64,000 nucleotides of DNA from IMG/VR virus record IMGVR_UViG_3300050821_013430, positions 408,750 to 472,749 of that record; one strand, written 5' to 3'. Position numbers and translations under genes: made by a program. Under the pieces are notes generated by a model that saw nothing but the letters and a program-made list of their open reading frames with translations, had not been told where the DNA came from and did no database searches. Positions 274 through 14,852 of this stretch are shown piece after piece. Position 1 is the stretch's first letter, and every line of letters begins with the position of its first letter.

Positions 274-288
274 TGTCTTCTCCTCCTT

Positions 289-393: not shown

Positions 394-473
394 GCCATCC
401 TCCTTCATTGTTCGAGTCTACGCCGCTGCCCCCATGCACATACGCACATGAGGGCAGAAACGGAGAAGCGAAC

Positions 474-736: not shown

Positions 737-1090
737 CTACTTCCTCAATGCCCTTTCCGGCAAGGGAGGTGGTGAAGCCGCTTTCTTGTGCGATGCGCTG
801 CTCTTGCGCTTCGGCGGTTCCGTAGGAGCCGGAATCCGAATCACTTCCGGCTGAGGGTCTTTCCCAGCATCCCTCACTGGGACGTTGCCTACCATAGCCT
901 TGACCACCGTCCCACCATCGCCTACCCACGCCAGTTTCGCACCGTACAAGTGAAGGGCAAAGTTCGCCGAAGCGCGCTCCCACACTTGAACGACGGTATT
1001 GTCCACCAAAGTGAAGTCAATTCGGACTTGGTACTGATTGCCCCCTTTCGGGGGAACGCTGAATCCACGCGGAAGCGTGCTGATGTTCAT
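737..1090 (-). CDS. hypothetical protein
   Basis: AAGGAGAG SD, operon orientation. Confidence 0.65.
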   Translation of the reverse strand: MNISTLPRGFSVPPKGGNQYQVRIDFTLVDNTVVQVWERASANFALHLYGAKLAWVGDGGTVVKAMVGNVPVRDAGKDPQPEVIRIPAPTEPPKRKSSASHKKAASPPPLPERALRK

Positions 1091-1104
1091 GTCTCGACTC
1101 TCCT

Positions 1105-1310
1105 TTCAGGTTGATTGCCGTAAGTCTGGCCACATCGACGGGGCGAGAGCGCGGATGTGTGGGGAGGGGATCCACGCTTCCTGCGACGACCGGATGTAGC
1201 CAGGCTTACGAGAGCCAAACCCAAACCCGTAGAAACGCCGATACCCGGCTATCCGACAATCCAACGAAGGATCGGGATAGCCGGGTATGAACCGGCCCGT
1301 ATTCGGCGAA
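1105..1310 (-). ncRNA. structured intergenic RNA / 5' leader
   Basis: Stem 1120-1130/1199-1209 and perfect 14-bp stem 1241-1254/1275-1288. Confidence 0.5.
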
Positions 1311-1317
1311 TGTTCGG

Positions 1318-1773
1318 TTAGAACAGCCGCTTTTCGGCGTGGGCATCGAGGTCTCCCATCGCCTTTTCCGCGGAAGTACGCCTGGGGAAAGGCCCCCACG
1401 CGCGCTCACACGAACCGAGGTTGTCCGACGTCGGAGCCTTGTCCGTCTGAACGATTCCGTAATCACTTCCGTCGTACACGACGTAAGACGGGCCCTTCGG
1501 CAGAATGGGGTGCACTCGCGTCCCGTCCTCATTCAGAGCGGGCTTTCGACCGCGCGGCTTGTATTCGCCGGAATCCTCCGACGTCTCCTCACCATTCTCG
1601 ATCTTCTCCTTCATCGCCTCGAACTCCGAAACGAGATATCCGAGAACGCTGGCAACTGCCGGATCATTGGAATCCTCATTGGCTTCCGTGATCTTGGCAA
1701 TCACCATGTTCAGGACGTTCACCCGAGGACTCGTGCGCGTCTTGCGCTCACCAAACGACATCAGCTCTTCCAT
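1318..1773 (-). CDS. hypothetical protein with KPRGRKP (AT-hook-like) motif
   Basis: Start reassigned to ATG 1773 (GGAG SD). Confidence 0.65.
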   Translation of the reverse strand: MEELMSFGERKTRTSPRVNVLNMVIAKITEANEDSNDPAVASVLGYLVSEFEAMKEKIENGEETSEDSGEYKPRGRKPALNEDGTRVHPILPKGPSYVVYDGSDYGIVQTDKAPTSDNLGSCERAWGPFPRRTSAEKAMGDLDAHAEKRLF

Positions 1774-1784
1774 CGTACTTCTCC

Positions 1785-1975
1785 GTATGTTGGCTCCCAA
1801 TGTGGGAGCGGTTTCGACCAACGGCTGAGGCAACATGCCTTGACCGTCGCACCCATAACCTAAGCATTCCTTCGACATTGACAAGCCCAATGCTGACGAT
1901 TATGCCGATGGCACGATCTTTGCCGAACAATGAGCCTCCGATACTCCCGAAGGCTCAGGCTCAGCCGTAGGCCTA
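1785..1975 (-). ncRNA. structured intergenic RNA / 5' leader
   Basis: Closing stem 1821-1829/1960-1968; hairpins 1793-1809 and 1931-1957. Confidence 0.45.
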
Positions 1976-1992
1976 TGTCATCCTACCTTGCC

Positions 1993-2385
1993 TCACTCTT
2001 TCCCCTGCACCGCGTCAACCAGCACCTGCGTTCGCTTGGCACGCTTCTTGGCATCCCATTCCTTCCGGGCGACCAATGAGCAGGCATAGCACGCAGGTAC
2101 CTTGTAGAGACCTCGGAAAGGGACAAGGTGATAAGCGGAGCGATTAGGGCTCCCACACACTTTGCAGCATTGGGCAGGACAAGGCTCACACGGCATTGCC
2201 TCCGCTCGTGCCACCTTTTCCGCCTTGTCGCATTCCTGCCGATACAGCAGGATAGTCTGACTCAGTGTTGCCTGAGCCACCAGGTGCGCGTTCCTTTCCT
2301 CCGATGACCGCGACTTGTTCCCCAATTCCTTGTGCTGCTCGCGCAGGGCGCGGAGCCAATCGATCACTTGCTGGTCGTATCTCAC
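1993..2385 (-). CDS. hypothetical protein with CxxC motifs
   Basis: GTG start after AAGGAGG; CKVC...CYAC. Confidence 0.65.
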   Translation of the reverse strand: MRYDQQVIDWLRALREQHKELGNKSRSSEERNAHLVAQATLSQTILLYRQECDKAEKVARAEAMPCEPCPAQCCKVCGSPNRSAYHLVPFRGLYKVPACYACSLVARKEWDAKKRAKRTQVLVDAVQGKE

Positions 2386-2450
2386 CTTTGACCTCCTTTG
2401 CCTACACTGTGGTTTGACCGCTACGACCTCATCCCCTCACCTTGTCCTAC
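2383..2450 (-). repeat. repeated intergenic element, copy 1 (copy 2 at 11105-11172)
   Basis: tcctttgcctaca(c/g)tgtggttt 21/22 identical, plus flanking cacctttg and cacctt(g/a)tcctac. Confidence 0.75.
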
Positions 2451-2477
2451 ACTCACTTCATTCGTGAGGTCTTCGAC

Positions 2478-2960
2478 CTACACCTTCACCCATTCCACCG
2501 TGCTCTTCCAGAACGGCGGAAGTCTTCTCTCCTTCAATCGTCGGTGCATAGCATACACCGCGGCGGGAGGACACCCGTGGATATTCCGCTGGGCGCACTT
2601 CGCCACCTCCTCCATCGTCCCACATCGGAGGGTAATGATCTCCGGCTCCCACCCGAAGGCCAGTGAGGCTTGATAGTAAGGAGCGATCTCCCATGCCTCC
2701 GTATTGGTATTGCAGACCACGATCAAGGGAGGAGGAATATCCTTCCATGGACACGCCACCTGCTCGATGAACCTACGGAAGCAATCAGCGTGCGCCTGTT
2801 CCAACTTGGACGGATCGAACTTGTAGTAGCCATCCGACATGGTGAAGAACTGATCGGCGCTGATTAGCGCCTTATGTCCGCTCGGCATAGGGAGACTATG
2901 TGCGTAGGTATCCTTCCCACTCCCAGGAATACCACTCATGATCACCACTCGCTTGCTCAT
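2478..2960 (-). CDS. AAA_33 P-loop protein (polynucleotide kinase / N4BP2-like)
   Basis: Walker A GIPGSGKD; SADQFF, LEQAHADC and NTNTEAWEIAPY motifs. Confidence 0.85.
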   Translation of the reverse strand: MSKRVVIMSGIPGSGKDTYAHSLPMPSGHKALISADQFFTMSDGYYKFDPSKLEQAHADCFRRFIEQVACPWKDIPPPLIVVCNTNTEAWEIAPYYQASLAFGWEPEIITLRCGTMEEVAKCAQRNIHGCPPAAVYAMHRRLKERRLPPFWKSTVEWVKV

Positions 2961-3199
2961 TGTTTCACCTCCACCAACCGATACAACTTCTTGGTATCCG
3001 TGTCGTAGAGCAGCACCTCTCCGCCCACATCCTCTGCATCCGCATACACCACATTGGGGCCATGTAGGTATTGGGCTAAGTAGGCGGAATCATACTTCCA
3101 GGCAGAGGAAAGCGGGCCCCATTGAAGATCGCTATTCAGAAACTGATTCAGATGTTTGGGATGCCGAATCACCAGAGCCAGATCGTCGATGTATCTCAT
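2957..3199 (-). CDS. hypothetical protein containing a 32-bp repeat
   Basis: Overlapping stop/start coupling with both neighbours. Confidence 0.6.
   Translation of the reverse strand: MRYIDDLALVIRHPKHLNQFLNSDLQWGPLSSAWKYDSAYLAQYLHGPNVVYADAEDVGGEVLLYDTDTKKLYRLVEVKQ
3062..3093 (+). repeat. 32-bp exact direct repeat, copy 1 (copy 2 at 14821-14852)
   Basis: atgtaggtattgggctaagtaggcggaatcat at both sites. Confidence 0.95.
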
Positions 3200-3507
3200 A
3201 CCCCCACCCTCTTCCTGTCCATCGCCACCGTGTGCATCACTCGCACCGTCTCGTACATCGAGGCTCCGGTGCGCTTGCTGTATGCCTTATAGGCATCCAA
3301 CTTGCTCTTGCCCGCAAACCAGGCACGAAACTCCTCGGGGAGAGGGGTCGCGAATTGACCCTTGGCCACCTTGGTATCCACCCTCAGGTGAATCTCATCC
3401 TCCACCATCCCTTTCAGGGAAACCAATTCCTCGTCGCTGAGACTCTTGACCACTTTCAGGGCCTTGTCTTCCTTCATCCCACTCTTCGGAGATTCCTTGG
3501 TAGTCAT
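3196..3507 (-). CDS. hypothetical protein
   Basis: AAGGAGG SD before MTTKES. Confidence 0.65.
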   Translation of the reverse strand: MTTKESPKSGMKEDKALKVVKSLSDEELVSLKGMVEDEIHLRVDTKVAKGQFATPLPEEFRAWFAGKSKLDAYKAYSKRTGASMYETVRVMHTVAMDRKRVGV

Positions 3508-3689
3508 CACATATCCTCCTTTGAGGGCAGTCGATACACTTTGGGCGTATCGTGATAGCAGCCTTCGCACACATCCCCAACGTACATGATCTTGTGGCCA
3601 GAAGTGGGCTGTTGGCAAGCGACAAGACCATCGACCCCGCCCTTGTTATGGTCTTGTTTGCAATGCAGACTCTCACAGTAGCAGGTCAT
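3507..3689 (-). CDS. small Cys-rich protein
   Basis: GGAGG SD, coupled to next gene. Confidence 0.55.
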   Translation of the reverse strand: MTCYCESLHCKQDHNKGGVDGLVACQQPTSGHKIMYVGDVCEGCYHDTPKVYRLPSKEDM

Positions 3690-3690
3690 C

Positions 3691-3993
3691 TCACACCTCC
3701 CATTCCGGGATCGTCCCGCCTGACATCACCGCCACACACCAGGAGTAGGCCTTGCTGAAAACTCCGTGTCCCTCGCACAAGGTGAGAGAGGCGATCTTGC
3801 TTGCCCACATCACGGAGATCGGATGACGGTTGAGGGCGGTGGTATTGAACTTGTCCCCCATCGACTCTTCCAACAGGGCTCGCAGGCGCGTAATATCCCG
3901 GGAAAAGGAATGCACCACTCCACTCAAATTGCAGGCGTTCTGAGAGGTGAACACATCCTCCGCCAAATCCTTCATGGTACGATTGTCGTCCAT
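3691..3993 (-). CDS. hypothetical protein
   Basis: GGGAG SD, operon tiling. Confidence 0.65.
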   Translation of the reverse strand: MDDNRTMKDLAEDVFTSQNACNLSGVVHSFSRDITRLRALLEESMGDKFNTTALNRHPISVMWASKIASLTLCEGHGVFSKAYSWCVAVMSGGTIPEWEV

Positions 3994-4114
3994 TGTCGTT
4001 CTCCCTTACTGTCGCTTGTCGAAGTAATCGGCAATCTCCGGGAGCAGGGCCATCGCCAATGCGAAACCCGACGCCACGCCCACAACGATGAGAGCAACTA
4101 CATGAGCAGCCATA

Positions 4115-4369
4115 TCACACCTCCTCGAATTGAACGGGGTTTTGACGGTCTTGGAGTTTCCAAGCCTTGACGCAGAGAGCCACGGCAGCGCCCAAGAAAG
4201 AGAACGCGGTGATGAACAAGACCACAGCCAGGGAGAAGTGCGCAGGGAAGGTCATATAGCCCACACCCAGCGCAACGCATCCGGTCAGTTTGCCCATTAC
4301 CAAGGCGCCGATAGCGAACCGATTGGTACGGATCACCTCGGGAGAAGGGGGAACTACTTGGTAGTACAT
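4115..4369 (-). CDS. small membrane protein
   Basis: Start at MYYQVV; two hydrophobic segments. Confidence 0.55.
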   Translation of the reverse strand: MYYQVVPPSPEVIRTNRFAIGALVMGKLTGCVALGVGYMTFPAHFSLAVVLFITAFSFLGAAVALCVKAWKLQDRQNPVQFEEV

Positions 4370-4522
4370 GGTGAGACTTCCTTTCCTCAGGAACACAGCC
4401 AGGAAACCAGGCCCAATACCCCGGAACCGATCACCAGTCCAATCCCAATCAGGATCAGAATCCAGGCACCGAAGTAGGCGAGGCGGAACCAACTCACATG
4501 ATGCTTATACACGCCCACCATC

Positions 4523-4786
4523 CTACTTCCCCTTACTCTCGAAGACGATAGGGGCCGGGATGCAATACTGAATCGCCCCATCGCACACCCACCCGTCCTT
4601 ACAAACGGAATCATTGGCGCAGGCGGTAGGAGGAGGCTCCGCCATCGCTTCCACCAGAACCTGAGAAATGGCCAGGTCATGCCGAAGGCGCAGGTCATCC
4701 AACACCACCAGCCCCAAACTCAGAGAGCCGAGGAAGGAGGCGAGGATCACCCACTTGTACTCATACATACGCTGATAGAGGTTCAT
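4523..4786 (-). CDS. membrane-anchored Cys-rich protein
   Basis: GGAGAGG SD; N-terminal TM; CANDSVCKDGWVC. Confidence 0.55.
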   Translation of the reverse strand: MNLYQRMYEYKWVILASFLGSLSLGLVVLDDLRLRHDLAISQVLVEAMAEPPPTACANDSVCKDGWVCDGAIQYCIPAPIVFESKGK

Positions 4787-4787
4787 G

Positions 4788-5075
4788 TCAGACCTCTCCC
4801 AAGATGTCGAAGATGTTGGCCGTAGGAACCACCGGAGCGGCGGGGGTGGGATGCTTGGCGTTGAGAGACTCCCAGCGGTTGAACTGCCCACGCACGATGA
4901 CATTGCCGTTCTGATGCTTCAAAGTCTGCGCATTCCCCATCTCGGAGAACTTGGGCGGGGAAGCGGCACGATCCTGCGACACCGTGCCACGATTGTTGGA
5001 TCGATTGTGGCGACGGAATCCCGACTTGCTCGCCTTGTTTTCCGACTTGTCCGCACTCTTGTTCTGCTTGGCCAT
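4788..5075 (-). CDS. basic low-complexity protein
   Basis: GGGAG SD before ATG 5075. Confidence 0.6.
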   Translation of the reverse strand: MAKQNKSADKSENKASKSGFRRHNRSNNRGTVSQDRAASPPKFSEMGNAQTLKHQNGNVIVRGQFNRWESLNAKHPTPAAPVVPTANIFDILGEV

Positions 5076-5204
5076 GGTAGTATCTCCCTATGCGTTGATT
5101 GGTTGAATTACCTGCGATTGACTGCGAACGATTTCGCTCGGAATCAAACGCAGAGAATTAGAACCCAGGACGGAGCGGATATAGGTGTAGGTAAGGAGTT
5201 CAAC

Positions 5205-5885
5205 ATGAAGAGTATCGAACGAGAAAAGGCACGGGTTATGCGACAAGAAGGACAGAGTGTTAGGGACATTGCTAAGGCGTTAGGGGTCGCCAGAAGTAGT
5301 GTCTCTGTATGGGTGAGGGATGTTGTACTTACTCAGGCGCAGATAGATGCGCTAACGACGCGCAATCCTATCTACGATAGGCAGCACAAGGGCGCGAAAG
5401 GAAGACAGCGATTAGCCAGGGAAGCACGCATTGAAGCCAGAAAAAACGGACACGAGGTAGCAAAACGAAAGGAATATCTGCACGCATTGGGATGTGGTCT
5501 GTACTGGGGCGAAGGAGCAAAGGATAGGGTAAGCTGTCAATTAGCCAACAGCGACCCATACTTACTGAAAGTATGGCTTCAATTCCTACATCAGTATTTC
5601 CCTGATGTGAAAACGACCCTGATCATCCATTGCTACACTGGCAACGGTCTATCAGTTGAGGAGATAGAGAATTACTGGTCTGACACCCTCGGTATTCCTA
5701 AGGGCGATTTCAGGAAGACAAGAGTGAATCCAATAAGTAGAGCGAGCCTACACAAGAAGCCACAGAACACGCTTCTCTACGGTACAGCACATATCACTGC
5801 TAAGAAAGGGATGCGAATAGTTCAACACATCTTCGGGGCCATTGAGGAATATGGTGGCTTCTCTACTGAGTTTGGGTTGGACTAA
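5205..5885 (+). CDS. HTH + LAGLIDADG-like putative homing endonuclease
   Basis: AAGGAG SD then ATG 5205; HTH (SVRDIAKALGVARSSVSVWV); GLYWGEG and NSDP...YWS motifs; opposite strand to neighbours. Confidence 0.7.
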   Translation: MKSIEREKARVMRQEGQSVRDIAKALGVARSSVSVWVRDVVLTQAQIDALTTRNPIYDRQHKGAKGRQRLAREARIEARKNGHEVAKRKEYLHALGCGLYWGEGAKDRVSCQLANSDPYLLKVWLQFLHQYFPDVKTTLIIHCYTGNGLSVEEIENYWSDTLGIPKGDFRKTRVNPISRASLHKKPQNTLLYGTAHITAKKGMRIVQHIFGAIEEYGGFSTEFGLD

Positions 5886-5891
5886 CTACAC

Positions 5892-5969
5892 TGGCGTCCC
5901 CATCCGGGCTCGAACCGGAACCAACAGATTGAAAGTCTGTCCGCCTAACCAGTTAGCAGATATGGGGAC
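5892..5969 (-). tRNA. tRNA-Glu (TTC) with encoded CCA
   Basis: Acceptor GTCCCCA/TGGGGAC+GCCA; anticodon arm ACAGA-CTTTCAA-TCTGT; T-loop GGTTCGAGCC. Confidence 0.93.
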
Positions 5970-5979
5970 ATACACTACT

Positions 5980-6360
5980 CTACTGCGGCACCAACTTCTT
6001 GATCATGTACTTGACCAAATCCCGATCAAAAGGCCACTCCTGTGTGGGAATCTTGGCAGCAGTCAGCCATGACCGAATGATGGCCGCGCCTTTCCCACCC
6101 CAACTATGGCTCACTGCTTGTGCGGGATAGTAGGATGGATCGAGTTCATTCACGATGAACTTCGCCACATCCTCCCCACTCCCATCTACGCCCAGGTCGT
6201 GATCCAACATCAGCAGACCGATCCGAACCGTCCCGGCTTGCAGAATCTCCTTCCCCTCATCGCAGGAGAAGGCATGCAAGACCACATGCCCCGCCGCGGT
6301 AAAGAGGTCTTCCGCCATGTCGTGCCGTGTCTGGTCATCATCCACGATCAGGATGTTCAT
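5980..6360 (-). CDS. cyclic-phosphate-processing receiver (cREC)-like domain protein
   Basis: ILIVDDD..R, LDHDLG and HSW..G motifs; start ATG 6360. Confidence 0.75.
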   Translation of the reverse strand: MNILIVDDDQTRHDMAEDLFTAAGHVVLHAFSCDEGKEILQAGTVRIGLLMLDHDLGVDGSGEDVAKFIVNELDPSYYPAQAVSHSWGGKGAAIIRSWLTAAKIPTQEWPFDRDLVKYMIKKLVPQ

Positions 6361-6361
6361 C

Positions 6362-6556
6362 TCACACCTCCTTCCCTTCCGGTTCCAGAAAGAACGCGTT
6401 GATGCGGCTCTCCTCCGTTTCCCCATCCCAGACCACATAGACCAACATGCCCCAAGTACGCTTACACACGCCCACCTTGACGTGCCACTCAGACTTGTTC
6501 TGAGCGGCGGAATGTCCCTGCACCCGATCTCCTGCCTTGACTGCGAAGAACGCCAT
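6362..6556 (-). CDS. small SH3/KOW-like protein
   Basis: KAGDRV...VYVVWDG pattern. Confidence 0.55.
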   Translation of the reverse strand: MAFFAVKAGDRVQGHSAAQNKSEWHVKVGVCKRTWGMLVYVVWDGETEESRINAFFLEPEGKEV

Positions 6557-6801
6557 TACCCCACCTCTCCTTTCAAGTCCTTCTCCATGTAGAAGTCCAG
6601 ATACCCATTGTCGAAGAGTACGACATAGGGGTACTTGTCCGCCCGGTACAGCCCCTCCCGATTCTCATTCAGGCGAATCACCTCGCCCGGCCCATGTCCG
6701 TCCGGATAGACTCCGAAGACATGCGCCACCCGATCCCCCACCTTGAACTTCAATTCCGCCGTTTTGGGCACATTGCCTCTCGGCATCTGATATTGACTCA
6801 T
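6556..6801 (-). CDS. small SH3-like protein
   Basis: KFKVGDRVAH...GEV...PYVVLFD. Confidence 0.6.
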   Translation of the reverse strand: MSQYQMPRGNVPKTAELKFKVGDRVAHVFGVYPDGHGPGEVIRLNENREGLYRADKYPYVVLFDNGYLDFYMEKDLKGEVG

Positions 6802-6942
6802 CTCATCCTCCCAGCAGTGCATACACTGCGGTGAAACTGGCTACACAGATGTACATCGCCCGAAGAAGAGTGTCGGTAATGTCAATGTCATCCATTGTCC
6901 TACCTCTTCTTGGGTTGGGGTTCGTCGAAGTGTAATCCTTGC

Positions 6943-7137
6943 TCATGACTTCTCCCTCATCGGAGGCGCACTCCGGTAGATGTATGTAGTTGAGGCCAGG
7001 ATGGCCCGTTCTCGTTCCTTCTGCCACCGGCCCCTCAGTGTCCGGTAATAGGCCCTCCCATCGAGGAACATACTTCGGCCCATGTAAAGCGACAGAACCG
7101 ACCAGATGGCAGCAGCAATGCATGAGATGATGTACAT
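6943..7137 (-). CDS. small membrane protein
   Basis: GGAGG SD; hydrophobic N-terminus. Confidence 0.5.
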   Translation of the reverse strand: MYIISCIAAAIWSVLSLYMGRSMFLDGRAYYRTLRGRWQKERERAILASTTYIYRSAPPMREKS

Positions 7138-7139
7138 GC

Positions 7140-7511
7140 TCACACCACCTCCCATCCCTGAGGATGCGTGGGATGGTAGTTGCAGGGGGTAGGAGCCCCA
7201 CACTTGTCGCAGGTGTGGGATTGGCAGGAAGCACGGAAGAACTCCATCTCTCGCTCCCTATCCGAGGTCTGCCCCTTGGTGGGCTGAGGTGGGAGACTGG
7301 GCACTTTCCGCTCCAAGTGTCGGGGGAGGGAGGGTTGGGTGTCGGGACAGGCCTCGTCGACTTCCACGAAACGGTCTGCGGAGTAGGGCGCATATTCGCC
7401 ACGATTGTCCTCCACTTCCAGCCATCCGGGCGAATAGGTGATAGCCCGATACTCTCTCCCCACCGTTAGCGCCCCTTCCTGCTTGGCGTTATTGACGCAC
7501 TTGACCTTCAT
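7140..7511 (-). CDS. hypothetical protein
   Basis: GAGG SD; MKVKCVNN...LTVGREY; C-terminal CDKC. Confidence 0.6.
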   Translation of the reverse strand: MKVKCVNNAKQEGALTVGREYRAITYSPGWLEVEDNRGEYAPYSADRFVEVDEACPDTQPSLPRHLERKVPSLPPQPTKGQTSDREREMEFFRASCQSHTCDKCGAPTPCNYHPTHPQGWEVV

Positions 7512-7527
7512 TGTCCCACCTCTCCCT

Positions 7528-8118
7528 TCAATCGTCTTTGCAGAAGCCGTTGTTCTCATGGCGCAGGTTGGCATACTGCACCACATCCACGCACATGACA
7601 TGAGGGGCTGCCTTCTGGTATTCAGGGAACATCAATGACACACCCGGTACGAAGGTGTGTTGAAGGCCTAACCCATGTCCCACTTCGTGCTGAGTGATGC
7701 CACTGAAACCTACAGCATCAATCCCATTCGCCTCCTCATCCGCCTCATCCCCAGGGACGAACACCCTCGCCCATTCGTGCCCCATGTGATCTGTCCAGTG
7801 ATAGGTGGTACCCACTGCGTTAGGGTCTCCGGAGAGGCGCCGAATCTCCTCCACGCTCTCACTGGTAATGGAGAAGGCGTTGTCGCAGGACTCATCGCAC
7901 ATCCGCTCCTCAATCACCACATCGAAGGACAGCCCCACATTGGCAGCCTTGGACTCCCACTCATCCAGACTTTCGAGCACCATCTGCATGTGGGGTGGGT
8001 CGAAGTGGGGGCTGATGTAGACGGTGTAGTGCGAAGGAGGATTGGCGCAGGCGGTGCCGAAGACGGATGCGGCGAACATCCCCAGCAAACCACCCACACC
8101 TAATTCCAGGGTTTTCAT
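7528..8118 (-). CDS. matrixin-like zinc metalloprotease, putative lipoprotein
   Basis: HEVGHGLGLQH plus Met-turn (SLMFP); signal peptide ending GTAC. Confidence 0.85.
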   Translation of the reverse strand: MKTLELGVGGLLGMFAASVFGTACANPPSHYTVYISPHFDPPHMQMVLESLDEWESKAANVGLSFDVVIEERMCDESCDNAFSITSESVEEIRRLSGDPNAVGTTYHWTDHMGHEWARVFVPGDEADEEANGIDAVGFSGITQHEVGHGLGLQHTFVPGVSLMFPEYQKAAPHVMCVDVVQYANLRHENNGFCKDD

Positions 8119-8480
8119 CGACCTACCTCCTGGTACAGACCCACACTCAGTCTCCCAAACTCCCCCACCGCGCACATCTGGTGATAAAGGGCGAGGGCGT
8201 CATCCACTGTTGGGCACTTCTCCAAGACACCTTTGGTGCCTGTAAGGAGATCAATGCCTCGAACGCACCACCGACCTTCTGGTAAGTGTCTGTATGCCCA
8301 CTTGCGCGGACAGAGGAACCGTAGGCTCTCCTTCACCTTTCCGTTCAACTCCTCCGATGTCTCACCCTCTACCACTTGGAACAACTGTATCCAACGGTAG
8401 TCGTTGTGGGATTGCAGGGCTTCCACACTCTCGTATGGGAGACTTACCTGCTTGTCCCTGAAAACAGCCACGAATCTCAC
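8115..8480 (-). CDS. hypothetical protein
   Basis: Coupled overlaps at both ends. Confidence 0.55.
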   Translation of the reverse strand: MRFVAVFRDKQVSLPYESVEALQSHNDYRWIQLFQVVEGETSEELNGKVKESLRFLCPRKWAYRHLPEGRWCVRGIDLLTGTKGVLEKCPTVDDALALYHQMCAVGEFGRLSVGLYQEVGR

Positions 8481-8725
8481 GGACTGCTCTTCTGGTCATA
8501 GGCCAGTTGCAGATTGAGCCAGAAGGCGACAGTAGAGCCTAACACCTTACTCAGGCGCTCGGCGATGTCGGGTGTGATGCTTGCTCGCTCATCCAGTAGC
8601 GCAACGATGGTGTAGGGAGGGATACCCGTTTGCCCCGCCAATTCCATTGCGCTCATGGTGAGAGGTTTGAGGTACTCCTCACGGATGACCTCACCAGGAT
8701 GGATTCGTCGCATACCGTTCTTCAT
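8477..8725 (-). CDS. higA: HigA-family antitoxin (XRE HTH), orphan
   Basis: IHPGEVIREEYL...SITPDIAERLSKVLG...FWLNLQ..YD signature. Confidence 0.88.
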   Translation of the reverse strand: MKNGMRRIHPGEVIREEYLKPLTMSAMELAGQTGIPPYTIVALLDERASITPDIAERLSKVLGSTVAFWLNLQLAYDQKSSP

Positions 8726-8928
8726 TGTCCTACCTTCAATTCCTTTTCGATCTCTCCGAAGTCCCTGTCGTACTCTTCCCACGCCAGTACGATACCGTGG
8801 GAGGTGTTAGTCCAGCGCTTACCATTGAAGTCCAGGTAGGTGCCGGTGTTCTGATAATCGACCACCATTCGCGCCAACATCCGCTTGGAACGCAGCATGG
8901 TGGGGATGGGATCACATCCGGTGTACAT
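8722..8928 (-). CDS. hypothetical protein
   Basis: Coupled to higA; no HigB/RelE motif seen. Confidence 0.55.
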   Translation of the reverse strand: MYTGCDPIPTMLRSKRMLARMVVDYQNTGTYLDFNGKRWTNTSHGIVLAWEEYDRDFGEIEKELKVGQ

Positions 8929-9160
8929 GTGCTTACCCCTTCCTTCTCTTTCGGGGGAAATTGGCTCGAATCAGTCGGAGGCATTCCTGCCAGGTGAGAA
9001 CACCTGCGCCACCATCGTCCAAAACGACCCAGATGGGATCACACGCTGGGGGAGTGTTGAAGTATCCCCTGATGTATCCGTAAGTAGCCGTGGTATCGAA
9101 GTCTTGCCGCGGCTTGCTTACGGGTAGGGATGGCGAGCAGGCGAAGTAAGATGACTGCCT

Positions 9161-9370
9161 TCATTTCCCCTCCTCATACCACCTCAGGATGGCTTTGAGG
9201 GTTTCGGGGGAGAGGATGACACTTTGCATTCCCGCACCCTCACCCTGGGTGATCTTGAAGGTGGATTCCCCATCATGTAGGGAAAGGTAGTCGATCCACT
9301 TGACCACCTCGACCTTGGGCGTCTCTTCCGCCCCACCACTGAAACACATCTTGTCGCCGATCTTGCGCAT
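9161..9370 (-). CDS. hypothetical protein
   Basis: GGAGG SD before MRKIGDK. Confidence 0.6.
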   Translation of the reverse strand: MRKIGDKMCFSGGAEETPKVEVVKWIDYLSLHDGESTFKITQGEGAGMQSVILSPETLKAILRWYEEGK

Positions 9371-9375
9371 GTTCC

Positions 9376-9558
9376 TTACCTCCCCTTCTTGGAATACACC
9401 GCCCGCAGCGAGACGATGGCCAGGGCTACGAACAGACAGGTGCTCCAGGCCACTTCGAGGGTATTCAAGTTGAAGGCGGTGTGGGAGAGTGCGGGGAAGA
9501 AGAAGTACAGCATCCAGGTGGTGGCGATGGCAAACCCGATGGCAACGAACGCTTTCAT
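9376..9558 (-). CDS. 60-aa two-TM membrane protein, paralog of 474..653
   Basis: GGAGG SD; MKAFVAIG...AFNLNTLEVAWSTCLFVALAIVSLRAVYSKK. Confidence 0.7.
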   Translation of the reverse strand: MKAFVAIGFAIATTWMLYFFFPALSHTAFNLNTLEVAWSTCLFVALAIVSLRAVYSKKGR

Positions 9559-9650
9559 GACATCCTCCGAGGTTGTGGGTGGTTGAACGCAAGTGAAACC
9601 TGCCAGCGAAGCGCCGCTTGAACAAGCGACAAGGTAAGATGACTGCGACC

Positions 9651-9947
9651 TCAGGCTGTCTTCGCCTCCTTGGCGAGCTCCCGACACACTCTGCACGGCT
9701 CCTTGTGGATGCAGGTGCCGGTCTCCTTCAATTCAGACGATTGGGCGGTGATCTCGTACACCGTCTCCGCCTTGGGGAGCAGACCGTACTCCGAACTCGC
9801 GATGTAGGTCTTGGCAGTCGGGCCGGTGCCCAGGGTGAGAGTGGCGATCCCAGTGTAAGTAGACCAGTCCCCTTCCTTCCGATTGCCTGCCACCCCCGCC
9901 ACGATTCGGAACCGTCCGTGATTGTCGTACTCGATGGTGAATTGCAT
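9651..9947 (-). CDS. hypothetical protein
   Basis: AAGGAG SD. Confidence 0.65.
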   Translation of the reverse strand: MQFTIEYDNHGRFRIVAGVAGNRKEGDWSTYTGIATLTLGTGPTAKTYIASSEYGLLPKAETVYEITAQSSELKETGTCIHKEPCRVCRELAKEAKTA

Positions 9948-9971
9948 GTGAGTATCTCCTTGTGTGGGTGG

Positions 9972-10247
9972 TTAGCGGCCGAGGTAGTCCAGCAGGTTCT
10001 CGTCTCCCCCGCCGAAGTCCTCTTCCCCACCTTGTGCGCTGCCTCGGTTGGCCTTGGGGATGATTGAGAACACGTTCATCGAAACGCGTACCTGTCCGTG
10101 CTCTCCGTCCTTTCCGCACACCCGCTGAGGGCCGCGGCTGCTGTAGATGATCTGGCTCTTGCCGGTCTTGCTCTGTCCCACCTTCTGGCTCAAATCGAGC
10201 CGAATGGTGAGAATGTCTCCGTCCAGGCTCATATCGATCTCTTGCAT
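9972..10247 (-). CDS. conserved small beta-rich protein (possible nucleic-acid binding)
   Basis: AAGGAG SD; LTIRLDLSQKVGQSKTGKSQII resembles a widespread uncharacterised family. Confidence 0.65.
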   Translation of the reverse strand: MQEIDMSLDGDILTIRLDLSQKVGQSKTGKSQIIYSSRGPQRVCGKDGEHGQVRVSMNVFSIIPKANRGSAQGGEEDFGGGDENLLDYLGR

Positions 10248-10291
10248 GACACTTGTTCTCCTTGTCGGTTGTTGTGGGTTGGATGTAGGGG

Positions 10292-10588
10292 TTAGGCGGA
10301 CTTGAGCCACGCTGACATGTCCATGCTCTCCTCTCCCGTCTTGTAGACGGTCGAGGTGTTCTCCGGGTCGACGTTTCCGCCGTTCTGCTCCAATTCGTTC
10401 ACCGTGTCGCCGAGGAGGAGGTTCAGCAGGGCGAAGCCGGAAGCATACTCCAAGACTACACGTCGGGCCTCATGGTAGTTGCCTTCCTCACCTCGGGTCT
10501 CGATCTCCGCCCGAACAGCCTTGCGGCTCAGGGCGCGAATGGGGGCGTTGCCGCAGTTGCTCTCAGCAATCCAATATGCCAGTTGCAT
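10292..10588 (-). CDS. hypothetical protein
   Basis: GGAG SD. Confidence 0.65.
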   Translation of the reverse strand: MQLAYWIAESNCGNAPIRALSRKAVRAEIETRGEEGNYHEARRVVLEYASGFALLNLLLGDTVNELEQNGGNVDPENTSTVYKTGEESMDMSAWLKSA

Positions 10589-10604
10589 GATGATCTCCGT
10601 TGTT

Positions 10605-10845
10605 GAGCCCCCTTGGGGGCGGTTGTCGTTTCGTATCCCAAGTTATCCCAGCAGTCAGCCCACATGAACGCAGAATGTGGCGGGGTATCGACGAGGCCCA
10701 TTCCAGCCCCTCATCCCGTCTGACATTCCCACAATTACCCCCGTTGAAGGTAAAGCGGGGCTTTCATGTAGGCTGACTGCTGAGGGGCTCCCAACCGGAG
10801 CCCGCAGACCGAAACCCCCTAAGGGATACCCTTGGAGGCTTCAAT
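10605..10845 (-). ncRNA. multibranch structured RNA
   Basis: 22-bp stem 10647-10668/10763-10784 whose mismatches are G-U on the minus strand; hairpins 10811-10842 and 10607-10620. Confidence 0.6.
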
Positions 10846-10853
10846 CCGACATC

Positions 10854-11099
10854 TCAGTCCAAGTGCCCACCCGTTCGGGGCGTAGGCACACCGTTGCTAC
10901 CTCCGCCTACTTCCTGCCACGGCATTCCCGCATCATCCCAGGTTGGCGCCCCGCAAGGGATGCCTTGTTGATGCGCCGTGTAGCAGAAGTCAGGATACTG
11001 TTGCCCACCGTCATCCGCGGTGGGGGTGTAGTCTACCGGGCCCGCACCATAGGCGCAGCCGCTCAACATCACGCACGCTGCCATCAGGTATCGAGCCAT
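10854..11099 (-). CDS. small lipoprotein
   Basis: Lipobox LSGC after a hydrophobic stretch. Confidence 0.6.
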   Translation of the reverse strand: MARYLMAACVMLSGCAYGAGPVDYTPTADDGGQQYPDFCYTAHQQGIPCGAPTWDDAGMPWQEVGGGSNGVPTPRTGGHLD

Positions 11100-11104
11100 T
11101 GTTG

Positions 11105-11172
11105 CACCTTTGCTTCCTTTGCCTACAGTGTGGTTTTTGACGCCTTCGCACTCTTCCGCACCTTATCCTACC
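11105..11172 (-). repeat. repeated intergenic element, copy 2
   Basis: See 2383-2450. Confidence 0.75.
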
Positions 11173-11375
11173 TTTGCCTTCTCGAACTCCGCCAGGATCA
11201 CATCCACCGATGCGATGGCTTCCTGCACCAATTCGGTCTCGATGCTGGCTTGCTCGATGTAGTCATCCGCACACATCAGCACCTTTTCCTTTCCCAGCCG
11301 GTGGATGGCAGGTAGATTGACTTCCTCCAAGGTGAGAATGCGACCGCAGAAGAAACAGCCGTAGATGTGGGCCAT
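11163..11375 (-). CDS. hypothetical protein
   Basis: Operon tiling; CFFC. Confidence 0.55.
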   Translation of the reverse strand: MAHIYGCFFCGRILTLEEVNLPAIHRLGKEKVLMCADDYIEQASIETELVQEAIASVDVILAEFEKAKVG

Positions 11376-11377
11376 TG

Positions 11378-11656
11378 TCAGTACCCCATCTCGATTACTT
11401 CGTTCTCGGCCGCAATGTCAGCCTGCCTCCGACAGAAGGCGCAAGTGGGCTCACACATCCCATCGCATCCCACCTCCTCGGCTTCGGCGCTCAGGTCGAG
11501 CACCCCCGGCTCCTCCGCCATCGGCACCAGTTTCAGCACCTTGTCGTACATCGTGTTCAGGGTGCCGTGCAGCTCCTTGTCCCCACACTCCGACATGTGG
11601 GCTCGGATGAGACGACGAAGCAGGCTCAGCTCCATCGCGGTGAATTGAGAGTCCAT
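11378..11656 (-). CDS. hypothetical protein
   Basis: AGGAGG SD before MDSQF. Confidence 0.65.
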   Translation of the reverse strand: MDSQFTAMELSLLRRLIRAHMSECGDKELHGTLNTMYDKVLKLVPMAEEPGVLDLSAEAEEVGCDGMCEPTCAFCRRQADIAAENEVIEMGY

Positions 11657-11690
11657 GTAGTCCTCCTGGGGTGGATGTGGTTGAATGTGC

Positions 11691-11878
11691 GCCAAAGTCT
11701 GCCCCGGGCTCCCTATCTGTCCGCTTCTCTCCGGTGCGTGGGGGTCTATGGGTGGAGAGAGGCTAACAGGAGACCGAGGCAGACTTTGACGGGGGATGTG
11801 GCTAAATACCTACATCCCCCTACATGCGCCAGAAACACTTGTAGCCAGGAGCAGAACCGAAGTCCCACTCCCAGCTAC
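11691..11878 (-). ncRNA. three-hairpin structured RNA
   Basis: 100-nt rod 11691-11790; hairpin 11791-11820; 17-bp G-U-rich stem with C(UUCG)G loop 11841-11878 on the minus strand. Confidence 0.65.
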
Positions 11879-11881
11879 TTG

Positions 11882-12109
11882 TCAGGGGAAGGAGAGCAAA
11901 TGCTCACACTTCCGCCCATTGTCAGACAGACGGAGGAAGATGCGTACCACCTCCCCCGAGATGCCCCACTCCTCTCCCACATCGTAGGCCCAGGTAGAGA
12001 AGACGCAGCTATCGCCGATACGCACCTTGCGCTGAAAGGTAGGATGCCACATCAGGGCCAGGCTGAACTGTACGGCGAGGTACTCCAAGGCACGGAGATG
12101 TAGGGTCAT
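11882..12109 (-). CDS. hypothetical protein
   Basis: Operon tiling. Confidence 0.45.
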   Translation of the reverse strand: MTLHLRALEYLAVQFSLALMWHPTFQRKVRIGDSCVFSTWAYDVGEEWGISGEVVRIFLRLSDNGRKCEHLLSFP

Positions 12110-12110
12110 C

Positions 12111-12335
12111 TCAGTACCCCACCGGCATGAAACCTACACTCTTGCACTTGGGGCACTTGGGTGAGTCCTTGGTGATTCCCAGCCCGCGGTAGAAGGCCAC
12201 ACGATCGGCGGGCATAGGCTTCTTGTGATCCTTGTGCCCACATTCCTCACACCGCCAGAACGGCTTGGGAGGTGTGATCTCACCTACGGGCATGTCGTCG
12301 CCGGACACGAAATCGTCATCGAAGTCGTTCATCAT
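12111..12335 (-). CDS. small Zn-ribbon protein
   Basis: CEEC...CPKC; GGAGG SD. Confidence 0.65.
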   Translation of the reverse strand: MMNDFDDDFVSGDDMPVGEITPPKPFWRCEECGHKDHKKPMPADRVAFYRGLGITKDSPKCPKCKSVGFMPVGY

Positions 12336-12529
12336 CCCACCTCCGTGTAGTGAAAAGCGTACAGGTACGGGGGGCCATCCACCCGCACGTTCGTCCGTCG
12401 ACGCACCCTCTTACCTTTGACCAACTCCTCGTACACGGGGAGCGGCTCCTGGGAGAAGATGCCATCTCGGCGCTGATGTAGGGAAGCAAGCGCCAATGCG
12501 ACTACCTCGGCAGAAAAGACACCCATCAT
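12332..12529 (-). CDS. hypothetical protein
   Basis: GGAGG SD before MMGVFS. Confidence 0.55.
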   Translation of the reverse strand: MMGVFSAEVVALALASLHQRRDGIFSQEPLPVYEELVKGKRVRRRTNVRVDGPPYLYAFHYTEVG

Positions 12530-12542
12530 CCCACCTCCTCGT

Positions 12543-12953
12543 TCAATCCGTTGGACAACCCGACTCGTACCACATGGTACGAGCATCGTCTGCTCTGTCT
12601 TGCGCCACCTGACGTTGGTACTTGAGGTACGCAGCCAGGTGCTCCTTCTGCTCCGGTGTGGTACAAGCGTCCCCATCCACCACCAGAACCACGTTCTTGC
12701 CCCCACACACCTCACAGGGGACGTCGTACATCCCACCTCGTGAGAAGTAGGCTTCCCTTTCCTCACTGCCGGGCTCGAACGCCTCGTCGAACTCCTCTTG
12801 TGAGTAGGCGTGGTTGCCGATGCTCGGTGTCAGGTGAGTGCCGTGTCCATCGCACTTGGAGCACACTTCGTGCTTGTGTGGGAGGAGTGCGACCACCTCG
12901 TCCCCGGTTTCGACGTCGTGGTAGGTGACTTCCCGACTTTGGGGCCGCATCAT
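12543..12953 (-). CDS. protein with DnaJ-type CxxCxGxG Zn motifs
   Basis: CSKCDGHG, CEVCGGK; GGAGG SD. Confidence 0.65.
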   Translation of the reverse strand: MMRPQSREVTYHDVETGDEVVALLPHKHEVCSKCDGHGTHLTPSIGNHAYSQEEFDEAFEPGSEEREAYFSRGGMYDVPCEVCGGKNVVLVVDGDACTTPEQKEHLAAYLKYQRQVAQDRADDARTMWYESGCPTD

Positions 12954-13229
12954 CCCACCTCCTCCTCTTCCTCCTCACACTCGTCTTTGTCCTCTGCCAT
13001 CATGCCCGACATATAGGCGACCGTGCGCCTGTCCTCGCACTCCGCCCACACTTCCGCCATTTCCCGACGTTGATCCCTGGGAGCCTTCATTGTCATACCT
13101 CCTCACAACCTGCCATACCATATGATAGGCTGTGAGGAACTATCCCACATGCTGCCCCAAACGCAGAAAACACGAATCCCCAGAAAGGAGCCTTGTGGCC
13201 CCTTTCCAGGGTGAATGTAGGTGGATGCC

Positions 13230-13430
13230 CTACTTGACTCGTTCCGCCTCACCTTGTGGGATGTCCTGCACCCCGAAGCGCTGCTGTAGGGTCATTGTCC
13301 CCATAGCGCCCAGGTTGTAGTCAAAGGTGACCACGGTGTGGGTTCCTTCCCGCTTGACTACGGTAACCTCCCACACTTGGCCATACTTGACCGAAAGGTG
13401 GGCGCGGATGGTAGGCGAGATGTCGTTCAT
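13230..13430 (-). CDS. hypothetical protein
   Basis: Start at MNDISPT. Confidence 0.5.
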   Translation of the reverse strand: MNDISPTIRAHLSVKYGQVWEVTVVKREGTHTVVTFDYNLGAMGTMTLQQRFGVQDIPQGEAERVK

Positions 13431-13620
13431 TGTCCTACCTACCACGCCACCGCGACCAGACAAGCCACCACGTAGGCCAGTGCCGCACCATAGGCGATGA
13501 TGTTGTTCATTGTGTGTCTTCTCCCTTCGTGTCGGTTGGGAAACTACAACGGCCCCAAACCTCCCGTGTATGGGAAGTTAGGGGCCGGAGGGTAGTTCTC
13601 CTACCTTGTAGGCTGGGAAC

Positions 13621-14136
13621 CTACTTCGCCGCGGGGGGAGTCACCTTGACGCAAAGCGTCTTGGATGCGTCCGCAAGGCGCGTCACGACGAAACCGAGTT
13701 CCTTACAGCGGATCGCGACTTGCTCGATCGCCATTCCGCTCTCGAATGCCTCGGAAAGCGCCGAACACGGCACGTTGTACGACCCGGGGAAACCGCCGAG
13801 CGAGGCACGCAAGCCAGCGGAAAGCCCGTTGTACTCGGCGCGGCGCGTCTCGTACTCTTCCGCATACGGCCCCATGAGATTCGCCAGATCCGCGCGAATC
13901 TGTTTCTCGGCCTCGCGCTTCCGCTCGGTCGCCATGAACGAAAGCGACTTGATCACGCGATCGTTGACGGTACGGATCGTGTCGGGAGTCAGCACCTTGT
14001 CGCCGAGAGCCTTGCCGTTGGGCCAGGCATTGGCGAAGATTGCGTGCAAGGTCGACAGTGCCTCGGTCGCCGCGCTCTCTTCCGTCTCGGAAAGGACCAG
14101 AACCTTGTTACTCGTGTCGCTGGGAATCATGGCCAT
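13621..14136 (-). CDS. first gene of the leftward early array, unknown function
   Basis: AGGAG SD before ATG 14136; very GC-rich codons. Confidence 0.75.
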   Translation of the reverse strand: MAMIPSDTSNKVLVLSETEESAATEALSTLHAIFANAWPNGKALGDKVLTPDTIRTVNDRVIKSLSFMATERKREAEKQIRADLANLMGPYAEEYETRRAEYNGLSAGLRASLGGFPGSYNVPCSALSEAFESGMAIEQVAIRCKELGFVVTRLADASKTLCVKVTPPAAK

Positions 14137-14149
14137 GATGACGTATCTC

Positions 14150-14707
14150 CTGTTATGTCCCATGTGGGACGGTTGGGTTACTACTGAACGCTACTGCTAC
14201 GTAGCGGTTAGAACCTAAGGCGCCGCGAAGCACCGCGCAACGTGGCATACTACTTGCCTTAGATGCTAACCGCTACGGGAAACGATGTAGGGGGAACCTA
14301 TACAGTGTGGCTCGACTCCTTACATCGTTTCCGTATCCTGGTAGGATGCTATCTCTACCTGATAGTCCAGTGTCGTTTTCTCCCTATGTTTTCGGGGGGT
14401 TAGGAAGGACGGGACACGTAACGAGTATCCGACCTAACACTAGACAGGATGACCTGGCCCTACTCTAGCCTACCTTGTGGCAGACCACGCACCCACTATG
14501 TGGGACATCTTCCGCCTCCGCTTTCATCGCCCCACCTTGCACCCCTTACGGGGTATGCATGTAAGACGCTAGGACGTTTGGCGCCGATGTAGGACTATTA
14601 GGTTGTCAGGGAGCAGAGGTCATCCAACATCCTACCTTGTCCCACGTTGCGACCACGGATGTAGCGCGCGGTGCGGGAGGGTAGGTTGCGGGAGAGGACC
14701 ACGATAC
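14150..14707 (-). ncRNA. large (~560 nt) structured leader / ncRNA
   Basis: 12-bp stems 14200-14211/14266-14277 and 14278-14289/14321-14332; long-range stem 14447-14455/14617-14625; GUAA tetraloop hairpin 14541-14554. Confidence 0.6.
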
Positions 14708-14717
14708 AGACATAGAT

Positions 14718-14734
14718 AGCACGTGCTATGCCAA
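14718..14734 (-). promoter_or_regulatory. sigma54-type promoter (predicted TSS ~14707)
   Basis: TTGGCATAGCACGTGCT = GG-N10-GC; overlaps palindrome ATAGCACGTGCTAT; directly upstream of the structured leader. Confidence 0.55.
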
Positions 14735-14820
14735 GAGAGGGTAGAGGCTAACTATGCGGAATCATTGGAGAGGCACCTGATGTAGGGCAAGGTGGGATGG
14801 GGGCGGGAGCCCAGGGTACG

Positions 14821-14852
14821 ATGTAGGTATTGGGCTAAGTAGGCGGAATCAT
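14821..14852 (+). repeat. 32-bp exact direct repeat, copy 2
   Basis: Identical to 3062-3093; partial variant ggctaactatgcggaatcatt at 14746-14766. Confidence 0.95.

What the first reader, a model, noticed from the sequence alone, without database searches (positions are those of the whole stretch)
1105..14150. Most long gaps in the early array are structured RNA modules
Seen: long stems at 1120-1290, 1793-1968, 5091-5152, about 9575-9645, 10605-10845, 11691-11878, about 13180-13210 and 13543-13596. Their sequences are largely unrelated and none has a clear U-tract. Known: the T7 early polycistronic RNA is cut by host RNase III at intergenic hairpins. Inference: one long early transcript is processed into stabilised mRNAs and perhaps sRNAs or decoy RNAs.
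Basis: partly seen in the sequence, partly recalled or inferred. Interest (0 to 1): 0.68.

Follow-up and report, generated by a model that had tools for sequence, protein, structure and literature searches.

The report
Structured RNA hairpins between giant-phage genes
Most long gaps between the small genes of this 473-kb soil phage fold into very stable RNA hairpins on the gene strand, and one keeps its pairing through compensating mutations in a second strain, so they are real RNA elements of a familiar general kind whose exact job is still untested.

Summary
The window is the last 64 kb of a 472,749-bp virus record. Bases 1-14136 hold about 43 small genes, all on the minus strand. The one at 9575-9645 is not (z +0.35). 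A ninth structured gap lies at 394-473. All six gaps over 125 nt are structured.

The gaps score as non-coding, match no Rfam family and are single-copy. Folding is stronger on the gene strand (G.U 68 versus A.C 8).

A variant strain carries a diverged copy of module 11657-11881. All 53 predicted pairs are kept, nine through changes on both sides, and a 27-nt core is invariant. The same strain lacks a 150-nt hairpin of module 10589-10853, so modules are built from separable hairpin units.

Three hairpins just after stop codons are followed by a shared short U-rich box.

RNase III cutting is plausible, since stems reach 15-22 uninterrupted pairs, but no data here bear on it. The phage encodes no RNase III or RNA polymerase that I could detect.

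Verdict: real cis-acting intercistronic RNA structures, new members of a known kind.

The parts
394..473 (-). One-hairpin module: 26 pairs, longest uninterrupted run 14, ending about 15 nt before the next ribosome-binding site
   Evidence: z -5.03; hairpin table
1091..1317 (-). Two-hairpin module. Hairpin 1242-1287 has 19 pairs and is followed by the U-rich box. Long irregular hairpin 1094-1241 has 56 pairs and a C-rich apical loop.
   Evidence: z -5.35. A relative at 69% protein identity keeps a 236-nt gap at this place.
1774..1992 (-). Module of five shorter hairpins; the weakest of the large modules
   Evidence: z -3.02. The 60-codon frame inside it scores as non-coding.
5076..5204 (-). Interrupted 26-pair hairpin (5101-5165) between a minus-strand gene and a diverging plus-strand HTH gene
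   Evidence: z -2.99 on minus, about -0.9 on plus
10589..10853 (-). Four-hairpin module. Bases 10632-10797 (half of hairpin 2 plus the branched hairpin closed by a 22-pair stem) are missing in variant strain L003. Hairpins 1 and 4 are kept.
   Evidence: z -7.46; L003 gap is 111 nt against 265
11657..11881 (-). Three-hairpin module. Hairpin 1 (11841-11878) has 17 pairs, a C(UUCG)G loop, and is followed by the U-rich box. Hairpin 2 (11791-11820) is absent in L003. Hairpin 3 (11694-11787) has a sequence-invariant core and a C-rich 21-nt loop.
   Evidence: z -7.81. Against L003:549-747, 53 pairs are 100% kept, 9 changed on both sides; slid controls give 0-1. A covariance model finds only this copy in the genome.
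13097..13229 (-). Two-hairpin module. Hairpin 13178-13211 has 15 pairs and is followed by the U-rich box. Hairpin 13097-13141 buries the ribosome-binding site of the next gene.
   Evidence: z -5.70. Of six substitutions in strain L002, three keep pairs as G.U, one turns an A.C mismatch into A-U, one is in a loop, and one breaks a weak helix. The ribosome-binding site is fully paired.
13511..13620 (-). One hairpin with lower stem, asymmetric internal loop and upper stem (core 13550-13587)
   Evidence: z -5.41; identical in L002
14137..14400 (-). Structured leader upstream of the first gene of the array. It folds at least as well on the plus strand, so its strand is uncertain.
   Evidence: z -3.93 and -2.39 for its two halves; -102.6 kcal/mol on minus against -112.2 on plus
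9559..9650 (-). It holds the junction of a gene present in the window but absent in strain L003.
   Evidence: z +0.35
2386..2477 (-). Unstructured gap sharing a conserved element of about 65 nt with gap 11100-11162. It could be a promoter or operator.
   Evidence: 22-nt blast match; z about 0
11100..11162 (-). Second copy of the conserved unstructured gap element

Best explanation
The modules are cis-acting structured RNA elements in the non-coding spacers of minus-strand polycistronic transcripts made by the host RNA polymerase. They are built from separable hairpin units.

I propose two jobs. Hairpins placed just after stop codons would form or protect the 3' ends of upstream messages. The long helices of 15-22 uninterrupted pairs would be double-stranded substrates that a host RNase III-type enzyme can cut. 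Together they would divide a long transcript into segments with their own stability and expression, as in the T7 early region.

Shown here: the structures exist, they are specific to the gene strand, they are non-coding, and selection preserves the pairing in at least one module.

Inferred: transcription across them, cleavage, and the effect on stability.
For: - Stability is far beyond shuffles in 8 gaps, and within the array every window with z below -5 overlaps a gap.
- Genome-wide, 72% of windows with z below -5 lie outside a crude ORF map, against 31% of the remaining windows.
- No gap frame has coding-like codon usage. Array genes score about 0.3-0.6 bits per codon and gap frames 0.2 or less.
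- Every module inside the array folds better on the gene strand than on the plus strand. Stems hold 68 G.U against 8 A.C appositions; the plus-strand fold gives 46 against 16.
- Module 11657-11881 against its diverged copy in L003: 105 of 105 cells pair on the gene strand but only 88 of 105 on the complement. There are 9 compensatory double changes and 8 one-sided changes, with slid controls at 0-1.
- The near-identical strain L002 changes module 13097-13229 mostly in structure-preserving ways.
- A more distant lineage keeps long gaps at matching places: 236 nt, 174 nt and 430 nt.
- Many stems have 13-17 uninterrupted pairs, and one has 22.
- No RNase III and no phage RNA polymerase were detected, so host enzymes would act.
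- Giant phages are known to carry many hairpin terminators and 5'UTR-derived small RNAs (PMC11512511).
Against: - No RNA 5' or 3' ends are available. The single RNA contig (13912-14189) says nothing about processing.
- Comparative support rests on two strains of one species-level lineage. It is strong for only one module. Modules 1091-1317, 1774-1992 and 394-473 have none.
- The invariant 27-nt core of hairpin 3 points to sequence-specific recognition, which simple punctuation or RNase III cutting does not need.
- One large hairpin is dispensable in a sister strain.
- The host, and so its RNase set, is unknown.
Confidence: 0.5

Rival explanations
1. Boundaries of independent transcription units. 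The first hairpin after each stop codon is a weak, non-canonical terminator, and a promoter for the next gene follows it. The array would then be a string of separately transcribed moron-like cassettes rather than one transcript.
For: - Three strong hairpins lie 3-30 nt after stop codons and share a short U-rich box. This combination occurs nowhere else in the 473-kb genome.
- One strain has a C-to-U change that lengthens the U run.
- Strain differences are cassette-like, and several breakpoints lie in gaps.
- Two unstructured gaps share a conserved element that could be a promoter or operator.
Against: - The U runs are only 3-4 long and start 5-8 nt from the stem.
- The generic terminator scan finds 9 sites against 12.5 expected from shuffles.
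- In L003 the box is even less U-rich.
- No recurring promoter motif follows the hairpins.
- Only 20-30 nt separate hairpin 1 from the next hairpin.
- Most hairpins have no U tail at all.
Confidence: 0.2
2. Stand-alone small RNAs or decoys. Some long hairpins, such as 11694-11787 and 1094-1241 with their C-rich apical loops, would be released and act in trans on ribosome-binding sites or on a protein.
For: - Hairpin 3 has a 27-nt invariant core and conserved C runs in its loop, inside a patch where the flanking coding sequence is only about 60-70% identical.
- The outer stem co-varies.
- The C-rich loops are compositional outliers on a G-rich strand.
- Giant phages do make 5'UTR-derived sRNAs.
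Against: - No promoter or terminator of its own is evident.
- It is single-copy, with no relatives beyond the species.
- No Rfam match.
- No target was tested.
Confidence: 0.15
3. Gene-specific translational operators. Each module would control the gene just downstream, by occluding its ribosome-binding site or by binding that gene's own product.
For: - The ribosome-binding site of the gene starting at 13096 is fully paired in hairpin 13097-13141.
- In module 11657-11881 and in its L003 copy, a closing helix pairs the U-rich box with the region of the ribosome-binding site.
- The downstream protein has a Cys-rich C-terminus that is identical in both strains.
Against: Across the array, ribosome-binding sites after modules are no more paired than the others (0.65 against 0.65, Mann-Whitney p = 0.55).
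Confidence: 0.1
4. DNA-level elements: cruciforms, recombination or cassette-junction sites of the integron attC or MITE type, or replication signals.
For: - One hairpin with 22-nt inverted ends is present in one strain and absent in the other.
- Mosaic breakpoints often fall in gaps.
- The array abuts a non-coding region where the GC skew switches sign.
Against: - G.U pairs are abundant and are kept or created by substitutions, while their DNA or opposite-strand equivalents would be mismatches.
- The elements are single-copy.
- The inverted-end sequence has only a chance-level 22-mer hit in 596 Gb of genomes.
- No shared core sites are seen at hairpin bases.
Confidence: 0.05

Closest known systems
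RNase III processing sites of the phage T7 early region (R0.3 to R1.3; established knowledge, Dunn and Studier)
   Same: Hairpins lie in spacers between co-oriented small genes that are presumably transcribed by host polymerase. Their sequences are unrelated to each other and they lack strong U-tracts. Some have the lower stem / internal loop / upper stem layout (for example 13538-13600).
   Different: The modules here are much larger (110-265 nt, with 2-5 hairpins) and only some gaps have them. Cleavage, the early timing and the host enzyme are all untested. One module has a sequence-invariant core that RNase III would not require.
Intercistronic C(UUCG)G and other stable hairpins of phage T4 (Tuerk et al. 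1988; my own knowledge)
   Same: Very stable hairpins lie between genes. Hairpin 11841-11878 has exactly a C(UUCG)G loop.
   Different: T4 hairpins are short single stems. These are long composite modules.
Terminators and 5'UTR-derived sRNAs of giant phages 201phi2-1 and phiKZ (PMC11512511)
   Same: A giant phage genome punctuated by many hairpins. Many are not classed as intrinsic terminators, some have elongated stems, and small RNAs arise upstream of genes.
   Different: Those phages share terminator sequence motifs and have their own RNA polymerases. Here the sequences are unique and no phage polymerase was found.
REP/BIME-type extragenic palindromes that stabilise upstream mRNA
   Same: Stable hairpins after stop codons inside operons.
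   Different: REP elements are multi-copy repeat families. These are single-copy.

Membership tests
T7-type RNase III processing site | Located in a spacer between co-oriented genes of a polycistronic unit | tested here: met
   All modules lie between minus-strand genes. That these genes form one transcript is not shown.
T7-type RNase III processing site | Helix of about two turns (around 20 pairs), often as two stems around an internal loop | tested here: met
   Hairpins of 15-56 pairs with uninterrupted runs of 11-17, and one of 22
T7-type RNase III processing site | RNA ends inside the stem that depend on RNase III | not testable with these tools
   Only assembled contigs were available, with one RNA contig at 13912-14189
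T7-type RNase III processing site | An RNase III is available during infection | tested here: inconclusive
   The phage encodes none; the host is unknown
Intrinsic (Rho-independent) terminator | G+C-rich hairpin | tested here: met
Intrinsic (Rho-independent) terminator | U-tract directly abutting the stem | tested here: not met
   At three hairpins a run of 3-4 U starts 5-8 nt after the stem; the others have none. The scan finds 9 sites against 12.5 expected.
Any described RNA family (ribozymes, riboswitches, sRNAs, leaders) in Rfam 15 | Match to a covariance model | tested here: not met
   Only tRNA-Glu at the gathering threshold; nothing in the gaps at E up to 1
MITE / palindromic mobile element | Multiple copies in the phage or in host genomes | tested here: not met
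   Single-copy in the genome. One chance-level 22-mer among 185,579 species genomes.
MITE / palindromic mobile element | Terminal inverted repeats and presence/absence polymorphism | tested here: met
   True only for 10647-10787 (22-nt arms, absent in L003). No target-site duplication was seen.
Integron attC cassette site | Conserved inverse-core and core sites at the hairpin base, after every cassette | tested here: not met
   By inspection of the hairpin bases there is no shared RYYYAAC / GTTRRRY. Only about 9 of 43 genes are followed by a hairpin.
Structured RNA under selection | Pairs kept through compensatory change, above slid controls | tested here: met
   Module 11657-11881: 9 double changes, 100% paired, slid controls 0-1. 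Only two sequences were compared, and the other modules have little or no comparative data.

The most novel reading that the evidence does not exclude
Some of the long hairpins, above all 11694-11787 with its invariant 27-nt core and conserved C-rich loop, are not mere punctuation. They would be a new class of phage-encoded regulatory or decoy RNAs carried in a strain-variable accessory array of a soil megaphage. They would be recognised sequence-specifically by a protein or a target RNA, and gained and lost as hairpin units between strains.
Probability: 0.15. Interest if true: 0.7.

Novelty: new member of a known kind. Interest (0 to 1): 0.45.

Why it matters
Almost nothing is known about how uncultured phages of 400-500 kb organise their transcripts. 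Here nearly the whole genome (1-424 kb) is one co-oriented gene block. Its first 14 kb carries 6 of the 14 most strongly structured regions in the genome. If these elements set message boundaries and stability, they are the main visible layer of post-transcriptional control in the phage's accessory-gene region. The module with covariation and an invariant core is a concrete, clonable candidate for a new phage RNA element.

Tried and rejected
- Hidden small genes in the gaps: rejected by codon-usage scores.
- Known RNA families, including self-cleaving ribozymes and riboswitches: none.
- Repeat family within the genome: none. A covariance model of hairpin 3 finds only itself.
- General occlusion of ribosome-binding sites by modules: rejected.
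- MITE from a host genome: only a chance 22-mer in a Zixibacteria MAG.
- Relatives in IMG/VR, by two proteins and one core DNA pattern: none.
- Relatives in cultured phages: none.
- The one metagenome scan returned only the same strain.
- Three contigs of a more distant lineage (JGI sample 3300050821) were seen, but their DNA could not be fetched.
- Sequencing runs gave identical short contigs and no RNA ends.
- A promoter family around the recurring CAAGGTRGG and GATGTAGG words: no extended conservation.
- Phage-encoded RNase III, T7-like polymerase or multisubunit polymerase: not found. The control for the T7-like model rang nowhere, so that negative is weak.
- A protein-atlas look at the first gene of the array was uninformative.
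Full report
**Context.** The window is bases 408750-472749 of a 472,749-bp IMG/VR virus record. Bases 1-14136 hold about 43 small genes (23-196 codons). All are on the minus strand, most with AGGAGG-like ribosome-binding sites and often overlapping by 1-4 nt. Public gene calls on identical contigs show the same gaps. G+C is 55-59% here against 40-47% in the rest of the window. Almost the whole genome from 1 to about 424 kb is one minus-strand block, and G+C climbs from 38% to 56% toward this end. The array starts at a 1.6-kb non-coding region (14137-15700), where gene orientation diverges and the cumulative GC skew turns. 'Early' is a reasonable guess from position and gene size, but it is not shown.

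**The observation.** I folded each gap as minus-strand RNA against 200 dinucleotide shuffles.
- 1091-1317: z -5.35
- 1774-1992: z -3.02
- 10589-10853: z -7.46
- 11657-11881: z -7.81
- 13097-13229: z -5.70
- 13511-13620: z -5.41
- 5076-5204: z -2.99
- 9559-9650: z +0.35, so the stem claimed at about 9575-9645 is not above chance

Five gaps are unstructured. All six gaps longer than 125 nt are structured. In a sliding scan of the array (1-14136), every window below z -5 overlaps a gap. Genome-wide there are 14 such regions, six of them in window 1-15300. Windows that strongly structured lie mostly outside a crude ORF map (72% against 31%). No reading frame in a gap has the codon usage of the array genes. 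Each gap matches only itself in the genome, and none matches Rfam.

**Strand and level of selection.** Every module inside the array is more stable, and has a more negative z, on the gene strand than on the plus strand. In the minus-strand folds, stems contain 68 G.U pairs against 8 A.C appositions. The plus-strand folds give 46 against 16. The exception is the leader 14137-14400, which folds slightly better on the plus strand.

**Comparative evidence.** Two contigs from another sample (L002 and L003) are a variant strain. It is about 98% identical but mosaic.
- L003:549-747 is a diverged copy of module 11657-11881. It lies inside a patch where the flanking genes are only about 60-70% identical or are replaced.
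- It folds just as strongly (z -8.76).
- On the two-sequence alignment all 53 predicted pairs are kept: 9 with both sides changed and 8 with one side changed. Partner-slid controls give 0-1.
- Read as the complement strand, only 88 of 105 cells would pair.
- The outer stems vary, while a 27-nt stretch and two shorter blocks in the core of hairpin 3 are invariant. This suggests sequence-specific recognition on top of structure.
- Hairpin 2 of this module is absent in L003.
- In module 10589-10853, L003 lacks about 150 nt (within 10632-10797). This removes the branched hairpin closed by a 22-pair stem but keeps hairpins 1 and 4. One C-to-U change gives a G.U pair.
- In module 13097-13229, L002 has six substitutions. 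Three keep pairs as G.U, one converts an A.C mismatch to A-U, one changes a loop to GCAA, and one breaks a weak helix.
- Module 13511-13620 is identical in the two strains.
- A third, more distant lineage (58-90% protein identity) has gaps of 236, 174 and 430 nt at matching positions. Its DNA could not be retrieved.

**Anatomy.** Modules are composites of 1-5 hairpins. Three strong hairpins lie 3-30 nt after a stop codon (1242-1287, 11841-11878, 13178-13211). Each is followed 5-8 nt later by a shared box of the form G-Y-G-U3-4-C-U. That combination occurs nowhere else in the genome. They look like weak, non-canonical terminators or 3'-end protectors, so 'no U-tract' is only partly right. The U runs are too short and too far from the stems for a classical intrinsic terminator, and a generic terminator scan is not enriched. 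The second element of the larger modules is a long irregular hairpin. Two of these have C-rich apical loops. One hairpin (13097-13141) buries the next ribosome-binding site, but occlusion is not a general property of modules.

**Mechanism.** No RNase III, T7-like polymerase or multisubunit polymerase gene was detected in the phage, and there is one sigma-70-family gene at the far end. Transcription and RNA processing would therefore rely on the host. Helices with 15-22 uninterrupted pairs are adequate RNase III substrates, from established knowledge of the enzyme. The T7-like model is therefore plausible, but nothing here tests it. The runs that hold this DNA are assembled contigs, and the only RNA piece covers 13912-14189.

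My best reading (about 0.5) is cis-acting punctuation of polycistronic RNA: 3'-end formation or protection after certain genes, plus double-stranded processing sites. The rivals are:
- independent transcription units with weak terminators (0.2)
- released small RNAs or decoys (0.15)
- gene-specific translational operators (0.1)
- DNA-level elements (0.05), disfavoured by the G.U evidence and the single-copy status

**Comparison with known systems.** The nearest analogues are:
- the T7 early RNase III sites
- the T4 intercistronic tetraloop hairpins
- the many hairpin terminators and 5'UTR sRNAs mapped in giant phages 201phi2-1 and phiKZ
- REP-type stabilisers

Membership in the RNase III-site class cannot be decided, because cleavage is untested. 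Membership in the classes of intrinsic terminators, Rfam families, MITEs and attC sites fails at least one defining feature in each case.

**Verdict.** The specific RNase III interpretation is untested. The elements are new members of a known kind, with a modest chance that the conserved-core hairpin is something new.

Noticed in passing
window 14137-15732: A 1.6-kb non-coding hub where gene orientation diverges and the GC skew turns. It holds five 34-nt repeat units (14930-15300) and six of the window's eight matches to a sigma-54-type -24/-12 pattern. One is a perfect consensus on the minus strand at 15717-15732, pointing into the array. It could be a promoter hub, origin iterons or a long non-coding RNA. 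The phage has no clear sigma-54 activator; the one AAA+ hit is non-specific.
   Followed up: partly
genome 369,340-369,850 (L011:2843-3350): A second non-coding stretch inside the minus-strand block with two more sigma-54-like motifs and clustered ATGTAGG words. It resembles the hub at the head of the array.
   Followed up: partly
window 14821-14852 and 3062-3093: An exact 32-nt repeat shared by the non-coding hub and the inside of an 80-codon array gene, also conserved in strain L002. If the hub is transcribed on the plus strand, it would be perfectly antisense to that mRNA. If transcribed on the minus strand, it would mimic it.
   Followed up: no
whole genome (G000): G+C rises smoothly from about 38% near 200 kb to 56% at 420 kb along a single co-oriented gene block of about 424 kb, then drops to about 45%. 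A gradient like this within one phage genome is unusual and unexplained.
   Followed up: no
window 5205-5969: A lower-G+C insertion in the array: a plus-strand 226-residue protein with an N-terminal HTH domain, next to a minus-strand tRNA-Glu(UUC). It is possibly a mobile or homing-type gene.
   Followed up: partly
window 8990-9160, 9638-9971, 11478-12105 against L003: Strain-level mosaicism of the array. A 98-codon gene is present or absent, 171 nt are replaced by 920 nt carrying other small genes, and one patch is strongly diverged. Several breakpoints lie in intergenic gaps.
   Followed up: partly
window 2478-2960 and 5980-6360: The array encodes a polynucleotide-kinase-like AAA_33 ATPase and a cREC_REC (cyclic-phosphate processing receiver) domain protein, close to the tRNA gene. 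This hints at RNA repair or RNA conflict functions.
   Followed up: no
window 19350-20471: A TnpB / Cas12f-like (OrfB_IS605 plus TNB domain) gene just beyond the array. Its guide RNA region was not examined.
   Followed up: no
window 418550-423810 in genome coordinates (window 9801-15061): Nine of the genome's 18 plus-strand copies of GATGTAGG, and 8 of its 12 minus-strand copies of CAAGGTRGG, cluster in or beside the array. Some sit at the first bases of modules. No extended consensus was found.
   Followed up: partly
window 6803-7402: Public gene callers disagree here: one 199-codon gene against three small ones. My small-gene call 6943-7136 has a negative codon score, so the annotation of this stretch is uncertain.
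   Followed up: no
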